A stretch of 64,000 nucleotides of DNA from NCBI GenBank assembly GCA_964252035.1, contig OZ176207.1; one strand, 5' to 3'. Numbering within the stretch: the stretch's first letter is position 1; the number at the start of each line of letters is the position of its first letter. The notes under the pieces were generated by a model. It did no database searches and had not been told where the DNA came from. It worked only from the letters and a program-made list of their open reading frames with translations. This document shows positions 2,187 to 39,065 of this stretch, piece by piece. This DNA comes from Podarcis erhardii. Lineage: Eukaryota. The translations under genes and the position numbers were made by a program.

Positions 2187-3056
2187 TTGCGTGGACAGGT
2201 GGAGTCCCCAGATCCCGGGCAGCCCCCCCCCCGTCATGTGGAATAACGACTCTAGACAACGTGCTATGGGATTAAATTGGCCACAACTTTATTAAATTTC
2301 AAATGTGGGTAGACCTTGGCTCAGGCATTGGGCGTTCTCCCTCCCTAGTCCCCAGCCGGGGACCTAGGGAGCTTCAGGGTTATCCAGGGTGGGGGGGGGT
2401 GGAGATGGGCCGGCTCTGGAGAACATATGTTTAAGCAGAGATAGCCGCCCCCGTTACGCCGCCGCAGGGGAGAGCAATGACGACCTTTCGGCGTACGGCC
2501 AAAGCCTCCCTTCAAAAACCCCTTTAACGGGGAACCCTGGTATCGCCGCCGCAAAGAGGAAGATGGACTAAAGGATTCCGCCCAAGGCCTGATACCGCCA
2601 AAGTTGTGACGTTTTGCTACGGGAAAGGCGAAACCTGCCAATGCAGGGAAATTCCTTTCCGGCCCTTTAACAGCGACCTTAACGTAGCAGCGCCCACATA
2701 CTTGTGAAGAAAGGTTAACCTGCAAAACCTGTGAAGAAAAGTTAACCTGCAAAAGAAGAAATTAACTGAGGGTGGGTAGGGTGGGAGAAGCTCTGGAGCC
2801 AAGTGAGGATTAACAATTAAGATCCACCCTCTATTGTGTGGGCAGGTAATCCCTCCCCTTACCTGGCCTGGTTTCCCTGGCAACACTTCCCCCAGGTGGG
2901 ATTGGACAACTCGCTGGGGTAGGCGGGGACCTCCAGGTATCCCACCTGGGGGAAGGCAAAGCCTATGCTGATGGGGCCACTCCAGATCCAGGGCTGCACG
3001 CGTCCACGCAAAAGGCGCCCCCCGTTTTAAGTGGGGAGCGGTCATTGTATCCTTTG
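2187..3056 (-). mobile_element. Putative non-autonomous, ORF-less YR (Ngaro/DIRS-related) element
   Basis: Termini ttg|cgtgg and cctttg parallel the ttg|cgtgt and gctttg termini of the large element. It shares AATAAAGTTGTGGCC and several helices with the Ngaro spacer/B2, and it is a GC-rich island in AT-rich flanks. The boundaries are inferred. Confidence 0.65.
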
Positions 3057-22157: not shown

Positions 22158-22630
22158 TGTTCCTCTTCTTCCGGCTCTTTTCACTTTTCTCCTCTGATCA
22201 ACATGATTCTGTCAATTTGGAAGTGGGTGGAGGAATGAATCATGCATTACAAATGGGTATTTCTCAAAACTGCCAGAGAGACTTATTTAAGAGGTAAAGC
22301 TGCTTTCTTGCATCATATACATCAGGGATAAGGATACTATGGCACTCCTGGTATTGTTGGATCCCTACTCCCATCATCTCCCATTTTGGCTGGGACTGGA
22401 ATCAGAGTTAGTTATGGGGAAGGAATTTGATTCACTTTGCATTAAAATGCAAACTTACAGACTGTGCACTTTCTGAAACGGTACACAAACCAAAACAGAC
22501 ATTCTTCAAAATTCACATTTCTCTGAATTTTGTAATGCAGTTCTCCAGCCAAGTAATGGGGACAAAAAAAATGCATATATTAAGTGTGCCTATAAATGCA
22601 TGCATTAGTGAAAATAATATACAAAATGCA

Positions 22631-23935
22631 TTCTTGGGCAAGGTGATTGAGCGGGTGGTTGCTGAACAACTCCAAGCACGCCTGGAGGAAACGGACCATT
22701 TGGATCCCTTCCAATCGGGATTCAGGCCTCACCATGGGACTGAAACTGCCTTGGTCGCGCTGGTTGATGATCTCCGGCGGGCTAGGGACAAAGGTGAGAG
22801 CTGTTTCCTAGTTCTGCTGGATCTCTCAGCGGCCTTTGACACCATCGACCATAACATCCTTCTGGACCGTCTAGAGGGGCTGGGAGCTGGGGGCACTGTT
22901 ATACAGTGGTTCCGCTCCTTCCTCCTGGGCCGTGTCCAGAAGGTGGTGGTGGGGGGTGAGTGTTCAGACCCCTGGGCTCTCACTTGTGGGGTGCCTCAGG
23001 GTTCTGTCCTCTCCCCCATGCTTTTTAATATCTATATGAAGCCGCTGGGAGAGATCATCAGGGGGTTTGGACTGGGTGTTCATCAGTATGCAGATGACAC
23101 CCAGCTCTACCTCTCCTTTAAATCAGAACCAGTGAAGGCAGTGAAGGTCCTGTGTGAGTGCCTGGAGGCGGTTGGAGGTTGGATGGCGGCTAACAGATAT
23201 AGGTTGAATCCTGACAAGACAGAAGTACTGTTTTTGGGGGGCAGGAGGCGGGCAGGTGTGGAGGATTCCCTGGTCCTGAATGGGGTAATTGTGCCCCTGA
23301 AGGACCAGGTGCGCAGCCTGGGAGTCATTTTGGACTCACAGCTGTCCATGGAGGCGCAGATTAACTCTGTGTCCAGGGCAGCTGTCTACCAGCTCCACCT
23401 GGTACGCAGGCTAAGACCCTACCTCCCCGCGGACTGTCTCGCCAGAGTGGTGCATGCTCTAGTTATCTCACGCTTGGACTACTGCAATGCGCTCTACGTG
23501 GGGCTACCTTTGAAGGTGACCTGGAAACTGCAATTAATCCAGAATGCGGCAGCTAGACTGGTGACTGGGAGTGGCCGCCGGGACCACATAACACCGGTTC
23601 TGAGAGATCTGCATTGGCTCCCAGTACGTTTCCGAGCACGATTCAAAGTGTTGGTGCTGACCTTTAAAGCCCTAAATGGCCTCGGTCCTGTATACCTGAA
23701 GGAGCGTCTCCACCCCCATCGTTCAGCCCGGACACTGAGATCCAGCGCCGAGGGCCTTCTGGCGGTTCCCTCATTGCGAGAAGTGAGGCTACAGGGAACC
23801 AGACAGAGGGCCTTCTCGGTAGTGGCGCCCGCCCTGTGGAACGCCCTCCCATCAGATGTCAAAGAGATAAAGAATTACCTGACGTTCAGAAGACATCTTA
23901 AGGCAGCCCTGTTCAGGGATGTTTTTAATATGTAA
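22631..23935 (+). CDS. L2 ORF2 reverse transcriptase (N-terminally truncated)
   Basis: QSGFR, DLSAAFD, GVPQGSVLSP, QYADD, LNPDKTE and SRLDYCN motifs. The first ~68 aa of the ORF-track call 22427-23935 come from unrelated flank. Confidence 0.9.
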   Translation, partial: FLGKVIERVVAEQLQARLEETDHLDPFQSGFRPHHGTETALVALVDDLRRARDKGESCFLVLLDLSAAFDTIDHNILLDRLEGLGAGGTVIQWFRSFLLGRVQKVVVGGECSDPWALTCGVPQGSVLSPMLFNIYMKPLGEIIRGFGLGVHQYADDTQLYLSFKSEPVKAVKVLCECLEAVGGWMAANRYRLNPDKTEVLFLGGRRRAGVEDSLVLNGVIVPLKDQVRSLGVILDSQLSMEAQINSVSRAAVYQLHLVRRLRPYLPADCLARVVHALVISRLDYCNALYVGLPLKVTWKLQLIQNAAARLVTGSGRRDHITPVLRDLHWLPVRFRARFKVLVLTFKALNGLGPVYLKERLHPHRSARTLRSSAEGLLAVPSLREVRLQGTRQRAFSVVAPALWNALPSDVKEIKNYLTFRRHLKAALFRDVFNM

Positions 23936-31451: not shown

Positions 31452-31875
31452 TTGCGTGTTGAGTCCCACAACGCCACCCTCACCAAATAACTCACACTTC
31501 ACACATCATTTTTGTTTAAGGTTTTTGGCATGATTTTGGCCACAACTTTATTAAAATACAAATACGTGAGTGGTTGCTTAGGCATTGGTTATGACTATCT
31601 GTCCTTGCCCAGGGACAGAGCTGGCCTTCCGGATTCCAGCGGAAGCCAGCATGGGAAACAAGTATTGGGTGAGAAAATGAAGCCGGGAATCAGTCTCACA
31701 CCTCTCACCCTCATGTTCCTGTGGGGCTTGCACGGCCCAAGTCCGACTCCGGGGACAAGGACAAAGAATGGCAAGCCCCTGGATTCCTTTAACGGAATTC
31801 CCTTTCCGCACCACCATTGGAGGGGTAGGCACTTACCCCTCAACCAACCAATTTTAACCAATGCCTAACCGCCAA
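31452..31875 (-). repeat. Ngaro split direct repeat B2 (424 bp, 3' end of element)
   Basis: Direct repeat of 32258-32681. Confidence 0.95.
31547..31552 (-). terminator. Polyadenylation signal AATAAA in B2 (identical copy in B1 at 32353-32358)
   Basis: The minus strand reads TTTTAATAAAGTTGTGGCC, followed by GT-rich downstream sequence. Confidence 0.65.
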
Positions 31876-32050
31876 CCTTACAAGTTGTGACTTATTTGCT
31901 ACGCAGTAGGCGAAACCCAAATGGCACCAGCCAATCAGCCAAATGGTAAATTCCTACCAGGCCCCCGCACCAAGGCGGACGACCCCATGACAGGCATAGC
32001 AAGGTCAAGCGAACCAGAAAACCCTACCCATTAAAGGGAGGGCGGGCGGG
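31876..32050 (-). other. Unique 175-bp spacer between A2 and B2 carrying a conserved structured motif
   Basis: Not repeated elsewhere in the large element. 31882-31964 aligns by eye with 2601-2665. Confidence 0.8.
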
Positions 32051-32260
32051 TGATCCGGTGCAGAGGCCAAGAGGACGCCCAGGAGAGGCGACCTGCATAT
32101 ATAGCCTCTGAATCCCTCCTCCCTTAATGGCCACATGCAAATTCACTGGCAACAATTAACCCTTAAAGGGTCTGGCCTTTTCCAACTGCCTGGTCACCGC
32201 AGGGTGGCTTGTATGTCCCAACCGCAACACGTGCTCTCTTTTCATGGAGAACACGCTTTG
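32051..32260 (-). repeat. Ngaro split direct repeat A2 (210 bp)
   Basis: Identical by eye to 38856-39065; overlaps B1 by the TTG at 32258-32260. Confidence 0.95.
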
Positions 32261-32681
32261 CGTGTTGAGTCCCACAACGCCACCCTCACCAAATAACTCA
32301 CACTTCACACATCATTTTTGTTTAAGGTTTTTGGCATGATTTTGGCCACAACTTTATTAAAATACAAATACGTGAGTGGTTGCTTAGGCATTGGTTATGA
32401 CTATCTGTCCTTGCCCAGGGACAGAGCTGGCCTTCCGGATTCCAGCGGAAGCCAGCATGGGAAACAAGTATTGGGTGAGAAAATGAAGCCGGGAATCAGT
32501 CTCACACCTCTCACCCTCATGTTCCTGTGGGGCTTGCACGGCCCAAGTCCGACTCCGGGGACAAGGACAAAGAATGGCAAGCCCCTGGATTCCTTTAACG
32601 GAATTCCCTTTCCGCACCACCATTGGAGGGGTAGGCACTTACCCCTCAACCAACCAATTTTAACCAATGCCTAACCGCCAA
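32258..32681 (-). repeat. Ngaro split direct repeat B1 (424 bp)
   Basis: Direct repeat of 31452-31875 at an offset of 806. The ORF track shows three identical translations at the same offset. Confidence 0.95.
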
Positions 32682-38855: not shown

Positions 38856-39065
38856 TGATCCGGTGCAGAGGCCAAGAGGACGCCCAGGAGAGGCGACCTG
38901 CATATATAGCCTCTGAATCCCTCCTCCCTTAATGGCCACATGCAAATTCACTGGCAACAATTAACCCTTAAAGGGTCTGGCCTTTTCCAACTGCCTGGTC
39001 ACCGCAGGGTGGCTTGTATGTCCCAACCGCAACACGTGCTCTCTTTTCATGGAGAACACGCTTTG
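38856..39065 (-). repeat. Ngaro split direct repeat A1 (210 bp, 5' end of element)
   Basis: Identical by eye to 32051-32260. Confidence 0.95.
38902..38908 (-). promoter_or_regulatory. TATA box (TATATAT) in repeat A1; identical copy in A2 at 32097-32103
   Basis: The minus strand reads GAGGCTATATATGCAGG about 45 nt before the end of repeat A. Confidence 0.6.

What the first reader, a model, noticed from the sequence alone, without database searches (positions are those of the whole stretch)
31539..31964. Covarying structured-RNA module shared by the Ngaro 3' end and an ORF-less element 29 kb away
Seen in sequence: the spacer+B2 region and 2280-2665 differ over most of their length but keep four helices in the same order, with compensatory changes. 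(1) A long-range 14-bp helix: ttaggcattggtta 31578-31591 / taaccaatgcctaa 31855-31868, versus tcaggcattgggcg 2321-2334 / cgcccaaggcctga 2579-2592. (2) gccacaactt 31539-31548 / aagttgtgac 31882-31891, versus 2280-2290 / 2600-2610. (3) agtagg 31905-31910 / cctacc 31953-31958, versus ggaaagg 2622-2628 / cctttcc 2654-2660; these enclose a conserved internal loop (minus strand AAUUU / UUCG) and a variable hairpin. (4) A GUUAAA-loop hairpin with different stems: attcc-tttaac-ggaat 31783-31798 versus cccc-tttaac-gggg 2519-2532. Helix 2 in both elements and helix 3 in the large element contain a pair that is G-U on the minus strand but A-C on the plus strand, so the fold favours the element's sense RNA. 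The unpaired motif CGUAGCAAA is also invariant. Inference: this is a functional cis-acting RNA domain, for example for RT recruitment or priming, packaging, or catalysis. DIRS-order elements lack a tRNA primer-binding site and their priming is poorly understood. I do not recognise this fold as a named RNA family.
Basis: partly seen in the sequence, partly recalled or inferred. Interest (0 to 1): 0.9.

Follow-up and report, generated by a model that had tools for sequence, protein, structure and literature searches.

The report
Conserved 3' RNA fold of Ngaro retrotransposons
The last ~450 bases of a lizard Ngaro retrotransposon RNA fold into a structure that is kept from lizards to frogs by matching changes on both sides of its helices. 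It is in no RNA database I could search, so it gives a concrete handle on how this poorly understood class of mobile elements handles or copies its RNA.

Summary
All four helices sit at the stated coordinates, on the element's sense (minus) strand.

The module is the unique 175-nt spacer S (31876-32050) between repeats A2 and B2, plus B2 itself. Ten further Ngaro 3' ends were fetched from Podarcis, Lacerta, Zootoca, Rhineura, Hemicordylus, Anolis and Xenopus.

- **H2** survives everywhere, through A-U>G-C, U-A>C-G and a 3-bp deletion in both arms.
- **H1, H3 and H4** covary within lacertids (0/5000 shuffles each).
- **H1 in Xenopus** is a 15-bp helix of unrelated sequence at the same place.
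- **Strand:** wobble pairs favour the sense strand (15 G-U against 2 A-C).
- **Position:** H2's 3' arm abuts AAUAAA and its 5' arm ends just before B2, so the fold closes the extreme 3' end of the polyadenylated RNA.
- **Databases:** Rfam gives nothing, and I found no paper on it.

Function is inferred. Most likely it is a cis-acting 3' domain that marks the true 3' end for the element's RT or RNP. Hairpin H3 resembles an ENE-type poly(A) clamp. A poly(A)-site switch and self-priming remain open.

The "ORF-less element" is an A-S-B mini-Ngaro that DNA recombination could also produce.

Other scan notes on this genome report ORF-less Ngaro relatives elsewhere. Note s1-232491, on this same stretch, predicted a ~0.55-kb transcript.

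The parts
31876..32050 (-). Spacer S: unique 175-nt segment between repeats A2 and B2. It holds H3, the UAGCAA motif and the 5' arm of H2.
   Evidence: Repeat map. A 160-220-nt spacer lies at the same place in Lacerta, Zootoca, a second Podarcis family, Rhineura, Hemicordylus and Xenopus.
31452..31875 (-). Repeat B2 (424 nt, 100% identical to B1 at 32258-32681). It holds both arms of H1, plus H4, H5, the poly(A) signal and the 3' arm of H2.
   Evidence: BLAST (424 nt, 100%).
31539..31548 (-). H2 3' arm, AAGUUGUGGC. It starts inside the last two A of AAUAAA.
   Evidence: It is the best duplex in 10 of 11 elements; the decayed Podarcis small copy keeps only 9 of its pairs.
31882..31891 (-). H2 5' arm, GUCACAACUU. 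It ends 6 nt before the first base of B2.
   Evidence: Compensatory changes in Xenopus, Anolis and Lacerta; a 3-bp deletion in both arms in Rhineura and Hemicordylus.
31578..31591 (-). H1 3' arm, UAACCAAUGCCUAA.
31855..31868 (-). H1 5' arm, UUAGGCAUUGGUUA.
   Evidence: 0/5000 shuffles.
31903..31960 (-). H3: two-stem hairpin. Basal stem GGUAGG/CCUACU, a symmetric U-rich internal loop (AAUUUA / GUUUCG), and an apical stem-loop.
   Evidence: the same topology in 8 sequences, z from -2.2 to -3.5; 5 of 7 basal pairs show changes on both sides, 0/5000 shuffles.
31929..31938 (-). CUGAUUGGCU in the H3 apical loop. It matches an NF-Y type CCAAT/Y-box at the DNA level (site identified from my knowledge of the consensus). 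ATTGG is kept in all lizard copies with H3.
   Evidence: In Rhineura the motif lies outside H3, so it may be a separate constraint.
31895..31903 (-). Unpaired CGUAGCAAA between H3 and H2. The core UAGCAA is invariant in 7 lacertid copies.
31783..31798 (-). H4: AUUCC-GUUAAA-GGAAU hairpin.
   Evidence: Three of 5 pairs show changes on both sides; 0/5000 shuffles.
31820..31841 (-). H5: GAGGGGUA...UACCCCUC hairpin just 3' of the H1 5' arm.
   Evidence: (19/5000 shuffles).
31547..31552 (-). AAUAAA poly(A) signal. A UGUA-type element lies upstream and a GU-rich element (31491-31505) downstream.
   Evidence: One search gives the positions. Conserved in all 11 elements. Function inferred from the standard vertebrate poly(A) signal architecture.
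32051..32260 (-). Repeat A2 (identical to A1 at 38856-39065), with a TATA box at 32097-32103, 52 nt before the end of A. It should drive a ~0.55-kb S-B2 transcript.
   Evidence: TATA or TATTTAA is conserved in Lacerta, a second Podarcis family, Rhineura and Xenopus.
2187..3056 (-). ORF-less A-S-B mini-Ngaro carrying the second copy of the module. H1 2321-2334/2579-2592; H2 2280-2290/2600-2610; H3 2622-2628/2654-2660; H4 2519-2532; AAUAAA 2288-2293; C-rich start of S 2768-2785.
   Evidence: A second, 66%-identical copy lies in Podarcis muralis at L002 6487-7058. The outer limits 2187-3056 come from scan note s1-232451; I checked them only in part.

Best explanation
Spacer S plus repeat B2 fold, on the sense RNA, into the 3'-terminal domain of the polyadenylated Ngaro transcript.

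Shown:
- A long-range rod closes the whole ~320-500-nt B domain. It consists of H2, a short UUGGC/GCCAA helix and H1.
- AAUAAA sits in the internal loop of this rod.
- H2's 3' arm fills the gap between AAUAAA and the cleavage site.
- H2's 5' arm lies in S, just before the first base of B2.
- Because that arm is in S, the complete fold can form only at the true 3' copy (S-B2). It cannot form at the internal copy B1.
- H3, H4 and H5 are conserved hairpins on this scaffold.

Inferred:
- The domain is the cis signal by which the element's own proteins (RT/RNase H, and perhaps ORF1) pick the right RNA and the right end to start minus-strand DNA synthesis. R2 and LINE 3' UTR folds work this way.
- Hairpin H3 probably adds 3'-end protection.
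For: - **Architecture.** A1-ORFs-B1-A2-S-B2 with a 160-220-nt spacer occurs in every complete tetrapod element fetched.
- **H2 covaries.** The window's large element has GUCACAACUU/AAGUUGUGGC. Xenopus has GUCACAGCUUU/AAAGCUGUGGC and Anolis GUCACAACUC/GAGUUGUGGC. Rhineura has GGUCACUUU/AAAGUGGCC and Hemicordylus UGGUCACUUU/AAAGUGACCA. The U.G wobble is kept in 9 of 11 and becomes U-A in one.
- **H1 covaries.** The core is GGCAUUGG/CCAAUGCC in the large element, GGCUUUUGG/CCAAAAGCC in Zootoca and GGCCUUGG/CCAAGGCC in the small family. Xenopus has an unrelated 15-bp helix and Anolis a 15-pair helix at the same position.
- **Independent recovery.** RNAalifold finds H1-H5 on a sequence-only alignment. 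Pairing is 92-98% against 17-69% in slid controls. Shuffles reach it 0/5000 times for H1, H3 and H4.
- **Unconstrained folds.** Minimum-energy folds of the whole module form H2 and H1 in Xenopus, Hemicordylus and Anolis and H1 in both window copies.
- **Sense strand.** 15 G-U against 2 A-C.
- **Position.** The H2 5' arm ends at most 12 nt before B2, and overlaps its start in Xenopus. The 3' arm overlaps or lies within 3 nt of AAUAAA in all lineages.
- **Bona fide poly(A) site.** UGUA, AAUAAA and a GU-rich element are all present.
- **Minimal element.** The ORF-less A-S-B element keeps exactly this module.
Against: - There is no functional or transcript data. The TSS, the poly(A) site and the choice between B1 and B2 are all inferred from motifs.
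- B1 carries H1, H4 and H5 too, so most of the fold is not unique to the 3' end.
- Energy z-scores of the long-range duplexes against shuffled or natural control windows are modest (-1.2 to -3.8).
- There are only 11 sequences in about 6 lineages, and no R-scape-type test was run.
- H3, H4 and CGUAGCAAA are missing from the Xenopus and Anolis copies.
- The mini-element could arise by A1xA2 recombination, or by reintegration of an excised minicircle, without any RNA step.
- 'A-ORFs-B' copies without S exist (L005-L007). If those forms transpose, S is dispensable.
Confidence: 0.5

Rival explanations
1. H3 is an ENE-type poly(A) clamp. Its symmetric U-rich internal loop, closed by G-C pairs, would form U.A-U triples with the poly(A) tail. 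H2 places that tail next to H3. The triple helix would protect Ngaro RNA from deadenylation. This can coexist with the main explanation.
For: - H3 folds identically in 8 sequences, with U-only tracts on both sides whose lengths rise together: 3/3, 4/3, 4/5, 5/4, 5/6, 6/6.
- C-G or G-C pairs flank the tracts, and the basal GG/CC is invariant.
- The position next to the tracts varies as A.C, A-U or G-C.
- In lacertids H3 lies 11-13 nt from the H2 5' arm. The tail would start a few nt after the H2 3' arm.
- ENEs are defined as a stem-loop with a U-rich internal loop next to G-C pairs (PMC7583470). One sits in the spacer of the Evade retrotransposon and aids its mobility (PMC12501189).
Against: - Both window copies have only 3 U per side, against 5 triples in KSHV PAN (PMC7583470).
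- An AA/CG step separates the U tracts from the basal G-C pairs.
- H3 is absent from the Xenopus and Anolis copies, so it cannot explain the older H2/H1 closure.
- No Rfam match.
Confidence: 0.25
2. H2 is a switch for poly(A)-site choice between the two identical signals in B1 and B2. The arm in S pairs with the nucleotides at and after AAUAAA, in B2 or back to B1. That changes CPSF access, so full-length RNA reads through B1 and ends at B2.
For: - The H2 3' arm always overlaps or abuts AAUAAA.
- The duplicated signal creates a real choice problem.
- In one invertebrate Ngaro (L067) the 3' end of S is a 10-nt perfect complement of AUAAUAAAAC across the signal (24/5000 shuffles).
Against: - Taken simply, pairing in S-B2 would mask the site that should be used.
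- The conserved closeness of the H2 5' arm to B2 and to H1 argues for S-B2 pairing, not S-B1 pairing.
- Only 2-3 nt of the hexamer are paired, and UGUA and most of AAUAAA stay in a loop.
- The L067 helix is AU-rich and absent from its minimum-energy fold.
Confidence: 0.2
3. It is a self-priming and strand-transfer device. After a cut at the S|B2 border, the H2 5' arm, paired to the extreme 3' end, primes copying of B2. This strong-stop DNA then transfers to the identical B1, as retroviral R does.
For: - The H2 5' arm ends at most 12 nt before the first base of B2 in all lineages. The 3' arm sits at the last templated nucleotides.
- B is a duplicated, R-like repeat.
- I found no paper that states a primer for Ngaro or DIRS elements.
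Against: - There is no evidence of a cut, and no ribozyme match.
- The simple version loses A2 and S from the cDNA.
- It is entirely inferred.
Confidence: 0.1
4. It is a DNA-level feature. The arms would be inverted-repeat binding sites for the tyrosine recombinase, or promoter elements (GC-rich start of S, CCAAT box), and not an RNA fold.
For: - S starts with a C-rich motif that reads as a GC box on the other strand. H3 holds a perfect CCAAT/Y-box, which moves out of H3 in Rhineura.
- Watson-Crick compensation alone cannot tell DNA from RNA.
Against: - G-U outnumbers A-C 15 to 2, and antisense duplexes are weaker.
- The H1 sequence is completely replaced in Xenopus while the helix stays.
- A 3-bp deletion in both arms of H2 does not fit half-site recognition.
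- The arms lie 260-400 nt apart. The likely recombination site is the palindrome at the B1|A2 junction, 32251-32265.
Confidence: 0.05
5. It is a self-cleaving ribozyme, as in retrozymes or Penelope-like elements.
For: It has conserved unpaired motifs (UAGCAA, the GUUAAA loop, the internal loop) inside a multi-helix fold.
Against: No hammerhead, HDV-like, twister, pistol, hatchet, hairpin or VS match, even at E<=10, in four regions. The motifs are not conserved beyond lizards.
Confidence: 0.03

Closest known systems
R2 and stringent-type LINE 3' UTR folds recognised by their own RT, with SINE/SIDE partners sharing the 3' tail
   Same: A fold at the 3' end of the element RNA, kept by covariation while the sequence drifts. 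An ORF-less element shares it. The presumed role is template choice and the start of reverse transcription.
   Different: - Ngaro uses a tyrosine recombinase, not target-primed reverse transcription.
- The fold is built from a unique spacer plus one copy of a split direct repeat.
- It encloses the poly(A) signal.
- No protein binding has been shown.
ENE triple-helix poly(A) clamps (KSHV PAN, MALAT1, plant and fungal TE ENEs, Arabidopsis Evade; PMC7583470, PMC12501189, PMC13541005)
   Same: H3 is a stem-loop with a symmetric U-rich internal loop between G-C-closed stems. It lies in an unusual spacer near the 3' end of a polyadenylated retroelement RNA.
   Different: - The U tracts are only 3-6 nt, and 3 in both window copies.
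- An extra AA/CG step lies next to the basal stem.
- H3 is ~400 nt from the tail in sequence and is brought close only by H2/H1.
- It has not been reported for DIRS-order or squamate elements in the papers I could search.
Retroviral structures around the poly(A) signal in R (HIV-1 poly(A) hairpin, HTLV-1 RexRE; from my own knowledge)
   Same: The poly(A) signal lies in a repeat present twice in the RNA and is embedded in conserved structure. The two copies must be used differently.
   Different: The partner strand (H2 5' arm) lies outside the repeat, in S, so only one copy can form the full structure. The direction of any effect is unknown.
DIRS-1 internal complementary region (ICR) and the Ngaro split-direct-repeat model (PMC7192593, PMC9210276)
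   Same: Internal sequences of a tyrosine-recombinase retroelement are thought to complete or join the element's ends during replication.
   Different: The ICR and B1A2 work by homology to the element termini at the DNA or cDNA level. H1-H4 are intramolecular, specific to the sense strand, and not at the termini. The descriptions of Ngaro I could read list A1, B1, A2 and B2 but mention neither a spacer nor a fold.
Tf1-type self-priming LTR retrotransposons (from my own knowledge)
   Same: An intramolecular helix could supply or position the primer for minus-strand synthesis.
   Different: In Tf1 the primer is the RNA 5' end paired to a site next to the 5' LTR. Here the helix joins an internal site to the extreme 3' end, and no cleavage is known.

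Membership tests
Ngaro (DIRS-order) retrotransposon | Split direct repeats A1 ... B1-A2-B2 | tested here: met
   A is 210 nt and B is 424 nt, both pairs 100% identical. The same layout occurs in 6 other species.
Ngaro (DIRS-order) retrotransposon | RT/RNase H ORF and a tyrosine recombinase ORF; SGNH hydrolase ORF in tetrapod Ngaro | tested here: met
   - RVT_1, E=1.6e-12.
- Ngaro-type RT relatives across squamates and amphibians.
- Phage_integrase hit is weak (E=0.0023, below the curated cut-off).
- GDSL/SGNH hit is weak, but a UniRef name calls a relative an SGNH hydrolase-type esterase domain protein.
Any Rfam 15 family, including self-cleaving ribozymes | Covariance-model match at or near the gathering score | tested here: not met
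   No hit at gathering score in the 64-kb window. At E<=10 only chance-level miRNA, lncRNA or scaRNA hits appear for the large module, the small element, the Xenopus module and two H3 hairpins.
ENE-type triple-helix stability element | Stem-loop with a U-rich internal loop on both strands | tested here: met
   Eight of 8 H3 hairpins have it. The U tracts are 3-6 nt per side.
ENE-type triple-helix stability element | G-C pairs immediately next to the U tracts (needed for the triplex and A-minor contacts; PMC12501189, PMC7583470) | tested here: inconclusive
   On the upper side, C-G or G-C pairs are adjacent in most copies. On the lower side the invariant GG/CC is separated from the tracts by AA/CG.
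ENE-type triple-helix stability element | At least ~5 consecutive U.A-U triples with the poly(A) tail or an A-rich tract | not testable with these tools
   Both window copies could offer only 3. Hemicordylus and the second Podarcis family could offer 5-6. This needs melting, gel-shift or structural work.
LINE/R2-type 3' RT-recognition fold | Conserved fold at the 3' end of the element RNA, with covariation | tested here: met
   Its 3'-terminal position is inferred from AAUAAA, UGUA and the GU-rich element.
LINE/R2-type 3' RT-recognition fold | Specific binding and initiation by the element's RT | not testable with these tools
   Requires recombinant protein assays.
DIRS-1-type ICR (terminal complementarity) | Internal sequence complementary or identical to the outer ends of the element | tested here: not met
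   The arms of H1-H4 are internal. The element ends (AAAGCGTG ... CACGCAA) pair instead with the B1|A2 junction palindrome at 32251-32265.

The most novel reading that the evidence does not exclude
The S-B2 fold is the missing priming and strand-transfer device of tyrosine-recombinase retrotransposons. H2 would hold (or, after a cut at the S|B2 border, become) the primer at the extreme 3' end. B would act as an R-like repeat for transfer of strong-stop DNA from B2 to B1. S would mark which copy of B is the start. H3 would clamp the poly(A) tail beside it.
Probability: 0.12. Interest if true: 0.9.

Novelty: new variant of a known kind. Interest (0 to 1): 0.68.

Why it matters
How DIRS-order elements start reverse transcription, choose between their two identical poly(A) signals and rebuild their ends is not known. 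Published schemes for Ngaro list only the repeats A1, B1, A2 and B2.

This work shows three things that those schemes do not contain:
- The unnamed spacer between A2 and B2 is conserved in position from frogs to lizards.
- With B2, it forms a covarying sense-strand RNA domain that encloses the poly(A) signal.
- Only the terminal copy of B can form the whole domain.

This gives defined helices to mutate and restore. If H3 proves to be an ENE, it would extend poly(A) triple-helix clamps to retroelements of land vertebrates and to the DIRS order. The only vertebrate TE example I found mentioned is stickleback retroviruses (PMC7583470).

Tried and rejected
- **Rfam.** Gathering and E<=10 scans of six regions gave no family.
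- **Metagenome scan.** An RT profile brought 80 invertebrate or marine Ngaro-like loci. They lack the tetrapod motifs. Nearly all have collapsed repeats. Only L067 could be examined, and it gave a weak AU-rich H2 analogue.
- **Viral contigs.** A scan for AATAAAGYTGTGGCC gave 119 chance hits and no module.
- **Energy tests.** Duplex energies against shuffled and natural control windows are only modestly significant. Large GC-rich windows give strong spurious duplexes. With G-U allowed, a 9-bp stem is expected by chance. The case therefore rests on positional homology and covariation.
- **First shuffle script.** My first script, which used a dinucleotide shuffle, timed out.
- **The count of structure pairs.** Not used, because it needs a typed 695-character structure string. 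I did the counts in scripts instead.
- **CCGCC/GGCGG pairing.** I considered pairing between the C-rich start of S and the start of B. I dropped it because Xenopus, Hemicordylus and the small element lack it.
- **Upstream of B1.** I checked for an H2-like partner there and found only an irregular GU-rich duplex.
- **ENE source papers.** The Tycowski 2012 and 2016 papers are not held. The ENE criteria therefore come from reviews and the Evade paper.
Full report
**Where the finding sits.** The window has no N. It comes from a lacertid lizard: the element's proteins are 71-89% identical to Podarcis muralis and P. lilfordi proteins, and less so to Lacerta and Zootoca. On the minus strand lies a complete Ngaro element:
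- A1 at 39065-38856.
- Four ORFs at 37356-32710. These are ORF1, an RT (RVT_1, E=1.6e-12), a weak Phage_integrase match and a weak GDSL/SGNH match.
- B1 at 32681-32258.
- A2 at 32260-32051.
- A unique 175-nt spacer S at 32050-31876.
- B2 at 31875-31452.

A is 210 nt and B is 424 nt. Both pairs are 100% identical. Both arms of H1, and H4, lie inside B, so they also occur in B1. H3, CGUAGCAAA and the 5' arm of H2 lie in S.

**The observation.** All coordinates and strings are correct. The two window regions share only a ~57-nt BLAST match but align end to end with the helices in the same order. Unconstrained folds form H1 in both copies and H3 in the small one.

**More copies.** Using the SGNH and RT proteins I fetched Ngaro loci from eight sources:
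- Podarcis muralis, three families.
- Lacerta agilis.
- Zootoca vivipara.
- Rhineura floridana.
- Hemicordylus capensis.
- Anolis sagrei.
- Eublepharis macularius (no repeats found).
- Xenopus tropicalis.

Every complete element has A1-ORFs-B1-A2-S-B2 with a spacer of 160-220 nt. A second copy of the small family lies in P. muralis, 66% identical.

**Covariation within lacertids.** A MAFFT alignment of seven modules, made without structural input, gives H1, H2, H3, H4 and a further hairpin H5 as the RNAalifold consensus. My counts on that alignment:

| Helix | Canonical pairs | Pairs changed on both sides |
|---|---|---|
| H3 | 98% | 5 of 7 |
| H2 | 96% | 1 of 10 |
| H1 | 92% | 4 of 13 |
| H4 | 94% | 3 of 5 |

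Sliding the 3' partner by 1-3 columns drops pairing to 17-69%. Shuffling the 3' residues within columns reaches the observed pairing 0/5000 times for H1, H3 and H4, 19/5000 for H5 and 682/5000 for H2, which does not vary in this set. These shuffles ignore relatedness, so they are supporting evidence and not a probability. Wobble pairs are 15 G-U against 2 A-C, and both A-C lie in the decayed Podarcis small copy. Antisense duplexes are weaker for H1 in all 11 sequences and for H2 in 10 of 11.

**Covariation across orders**.

| Source | H2 5' arm / 3' arm | Change relative to the large element |
|---|---|---|
| Window, large element | GUCACAACUU / AAGUUGUGGC | reference |
| Xenopus | GUCACAGCUUU / AAAGCUGUGGC | A-U to G-C |
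| Anolis | GUCACAACUC / GAGUUGUGGC | U-A to C-G |
| Lacerta | GUCACAACUG / CGGUUGUGGC | U-A, U-A to U.G, G-C |
| Rhineura | GGUCACUUU / AAAGUGGCC | 3 bp lost in both arms |
| Hemicordylus | UGGUCACUUU / AAAGUGACCA | 3 bp lost in both arms; U.G becomes U-A |

H1 varies as follows:
- Zootoca gains one pair in both arms (GGCUUUUGG/CCAAAAGCC).
- The small family has GGCCUUGG/CCAAGGCC.
- L005 and L008 change the distal pairs.
- Anolis has GCAUGGG.CCUGGAUC / GAUCCAGG.CCCAUGC.
- Xenopus has an unrelated 15-bp helix, CCUUGUCAGUCUGCC / GGCAGACUGGCAAGG, with two wobble pairs.

A short extra helix, UUGGC/GCCAA, flanks H1 in most copies. Unconstrained folds of the whole module form H2 and H1 in Xenopus, Hemicordylus and Anolis. 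Energy tests against shuffled or natural windows are only modest. The argument therefore rests on positional homology and compensation.

**Position relative to RNA processing signals.** In every lineage the H2 3' arm overlaps the last 2-3 A of AAUAAA or lies within 3 nt of it. The 5' arm ends at most 12 nt before the first base of B2, and overlaps it in Xenopus. A UGUA-type element lies upstream and a GU-rich element (31491-31505) downstream. This is the standard vertebrate poly(A) layout, which I take from established knowledge. The RNA should therefore end a few nucleotides after H2. H2, the UUGGC/GCCAA helix and H1 form a rod that closes the B domain, with the poly(A) signal in its internal loop. 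Because the H2 5' arm is in S, only S-B2 can form the full structure.

**Promoter in A.** A carries a TATA box 52 nt before its 3' end (A2 32097-32103, A1 38902-38908). It is conserved in Lacerta, a second Podarcis family, Rhineura and Xenopus. Both A1 and A2 should therefore fire, and A2 should give a ~0.55-kb S-B2 RNA. Scan note s1-232491 had predicted the same, and I reached it independently from the alignment. The B1|A2 junction is a palindrome, ACACGC-AAA-GCGTGT (32251-32265). The element ends AAAGCGTG...CACGCAA, which fits a recombinase site at the junction. This is separate from H1-H4.

**The ORF-less element.**
- An A-like part with a degenerate TATA (2824-2835).
- The C-rich start of S (2768-2785).
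- Then S and B, ending in ...CACGCAA near 2187 (note s1-232451).

It is an A-S-B mini-Ngaro. Such a unit could arise by A1xA2 recombination, or by reintegration of the circle excised by B1xB2 recombination. Copies with ORFs and a single B also exist (L005-L007).

**H3.** All eight H3 hairpins fold the same way, with z from -2.2 to -3.5. Each has a basal stem, a symmetric internal loop of U tracts, and an apical stem-loop holding AUUGG. The loop is AA-U(3-6) on the 5' side and U(3-6)-C/U-G on the 3' side. The two U tracts lengthen together, from 3/3 in both window copies to 6/6 in Hemicordylus. This is the anatomy given for ENE poly(A) clamps: a stem-loop with a U-rich internal loop next to G-C pairs (PMC7583470). 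One such element lies in an unusual spacer of the Arabidopsis Evade retrotransposon and aids its mobility (PMC12501189). H2 would place the poly(A) tail next to H3. Three points count against this reading:
- The window copies have short tracts.
- An AA/CG step separates the tracts from the basal pairs.
- H3 is absent from the Xenopus and Anolis copies, so it is younger than the H2/H1 closure.

**What is known.** Rfam has no matching family. Full-text searches found no description of an Ngaro or DIRS RNA fold, spacer or ENE. The accounts I could read list only A1, B1, A2 and B2 (PMC9210276, PMC7192593). The original Ngaro papers are not in the library, so prior mention cannot be excluded.

**Verdict.** The structure is real, specific to the sense strand, and conserved from frogs to lizards. 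The best reading is a cis-acting 3'-terminal RNA domain that identifies the true 3' end for the element's replication proteins (confidence 0.5). An ENE-like role for H3 (0.25), a poly(A)-site switch (0.2) and self-priming (0.1) remain as overlapping or rival readings. DNA-level, ribozyme and chance explanations are unlikely.

Noticed in passing
window 32097-32103 and 38902-38908 (minus strand): TATA box 52 nt before the 3' end of repeat A, conserved in lizard and Xenopus Ngaro. A2 therefore duplicates the promoter and should drive a ~0.55-kb S-B2 RNA.
   Followed up: partly
window 32251-32265 (minus strand): Palindrome ACACGC-AAA-GCGTGT exactly at the B1|A2 junction. The element ends read AAAGCGTG...CACGCAA with a shared AA. 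It is the likely tyrosine-recombinase crossover site.
   Followed up: partly
window 32036-32052 and 2768-2785; L067 4737-4753: S always begins with a C-rich motif (CACCCNCCCTCCC). This holds even in an invertebrate Ngaro from a metagenome. B begins with (UU)GGCGG in the lacertid, small-family and L067 copies, and with a related G-rich GCG sequence in Rhineura and Hemicordylus. Function unknown.
   Followed up: no
window 31929-31938; L009 11126-11137: A perfect NF-Y type CCAAT/Y-box (CTGATTGGCT) lies in the H3 apical loop. In Rhineura the same motif lies outside H3. This suggests a separate DNA-level or protein-binding constraint.
   Followed up: partly
L005 5575-5895, L006 5175-5531, L007 4634-4986: Podarcis Ngaro copies with ORFs and a single B but no A2-S-B2 (the 'A-ORFs-B' state). 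They are probably B1xB2 recombination products.
   Followed up: no
L063 1258-4899 and 7347-10988; L067 4260-5411: Metagenome contigs carry Ngaro-like elements in head-to-tail tandem, or in an arrangement derived from a circle junction. In L063 the unit is 6089 nt at 99.97% identity. In L067 the order is B-A / S / B-A.
   Followed up: partly
window 22427-23935 (+): A 502-aa ORF with a strong RVT_1 match (E=1.1e-32). It is a different retroelement, not examined.
   Followed up: no
window 2991-3012 vs 2186-2207: The small element holds, about 45 nt inside its 5' part, an inverted copy of its own 3' terminus (TTTGCGTGGAC / GTCCACGCAAA). Homology between the two small copies continues upstream of it, so the true 5' boundary is unclear.
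   Followed up: partly
window 31593-31599 and 32399-32405 (minus strand): GAUAGUC just 5' of the H1 3' arm is conserved in the five copies of the large Ngaro lineage in the alignment (window, L001, L003, L004, L008). Function unexplained.
   Followed up: no
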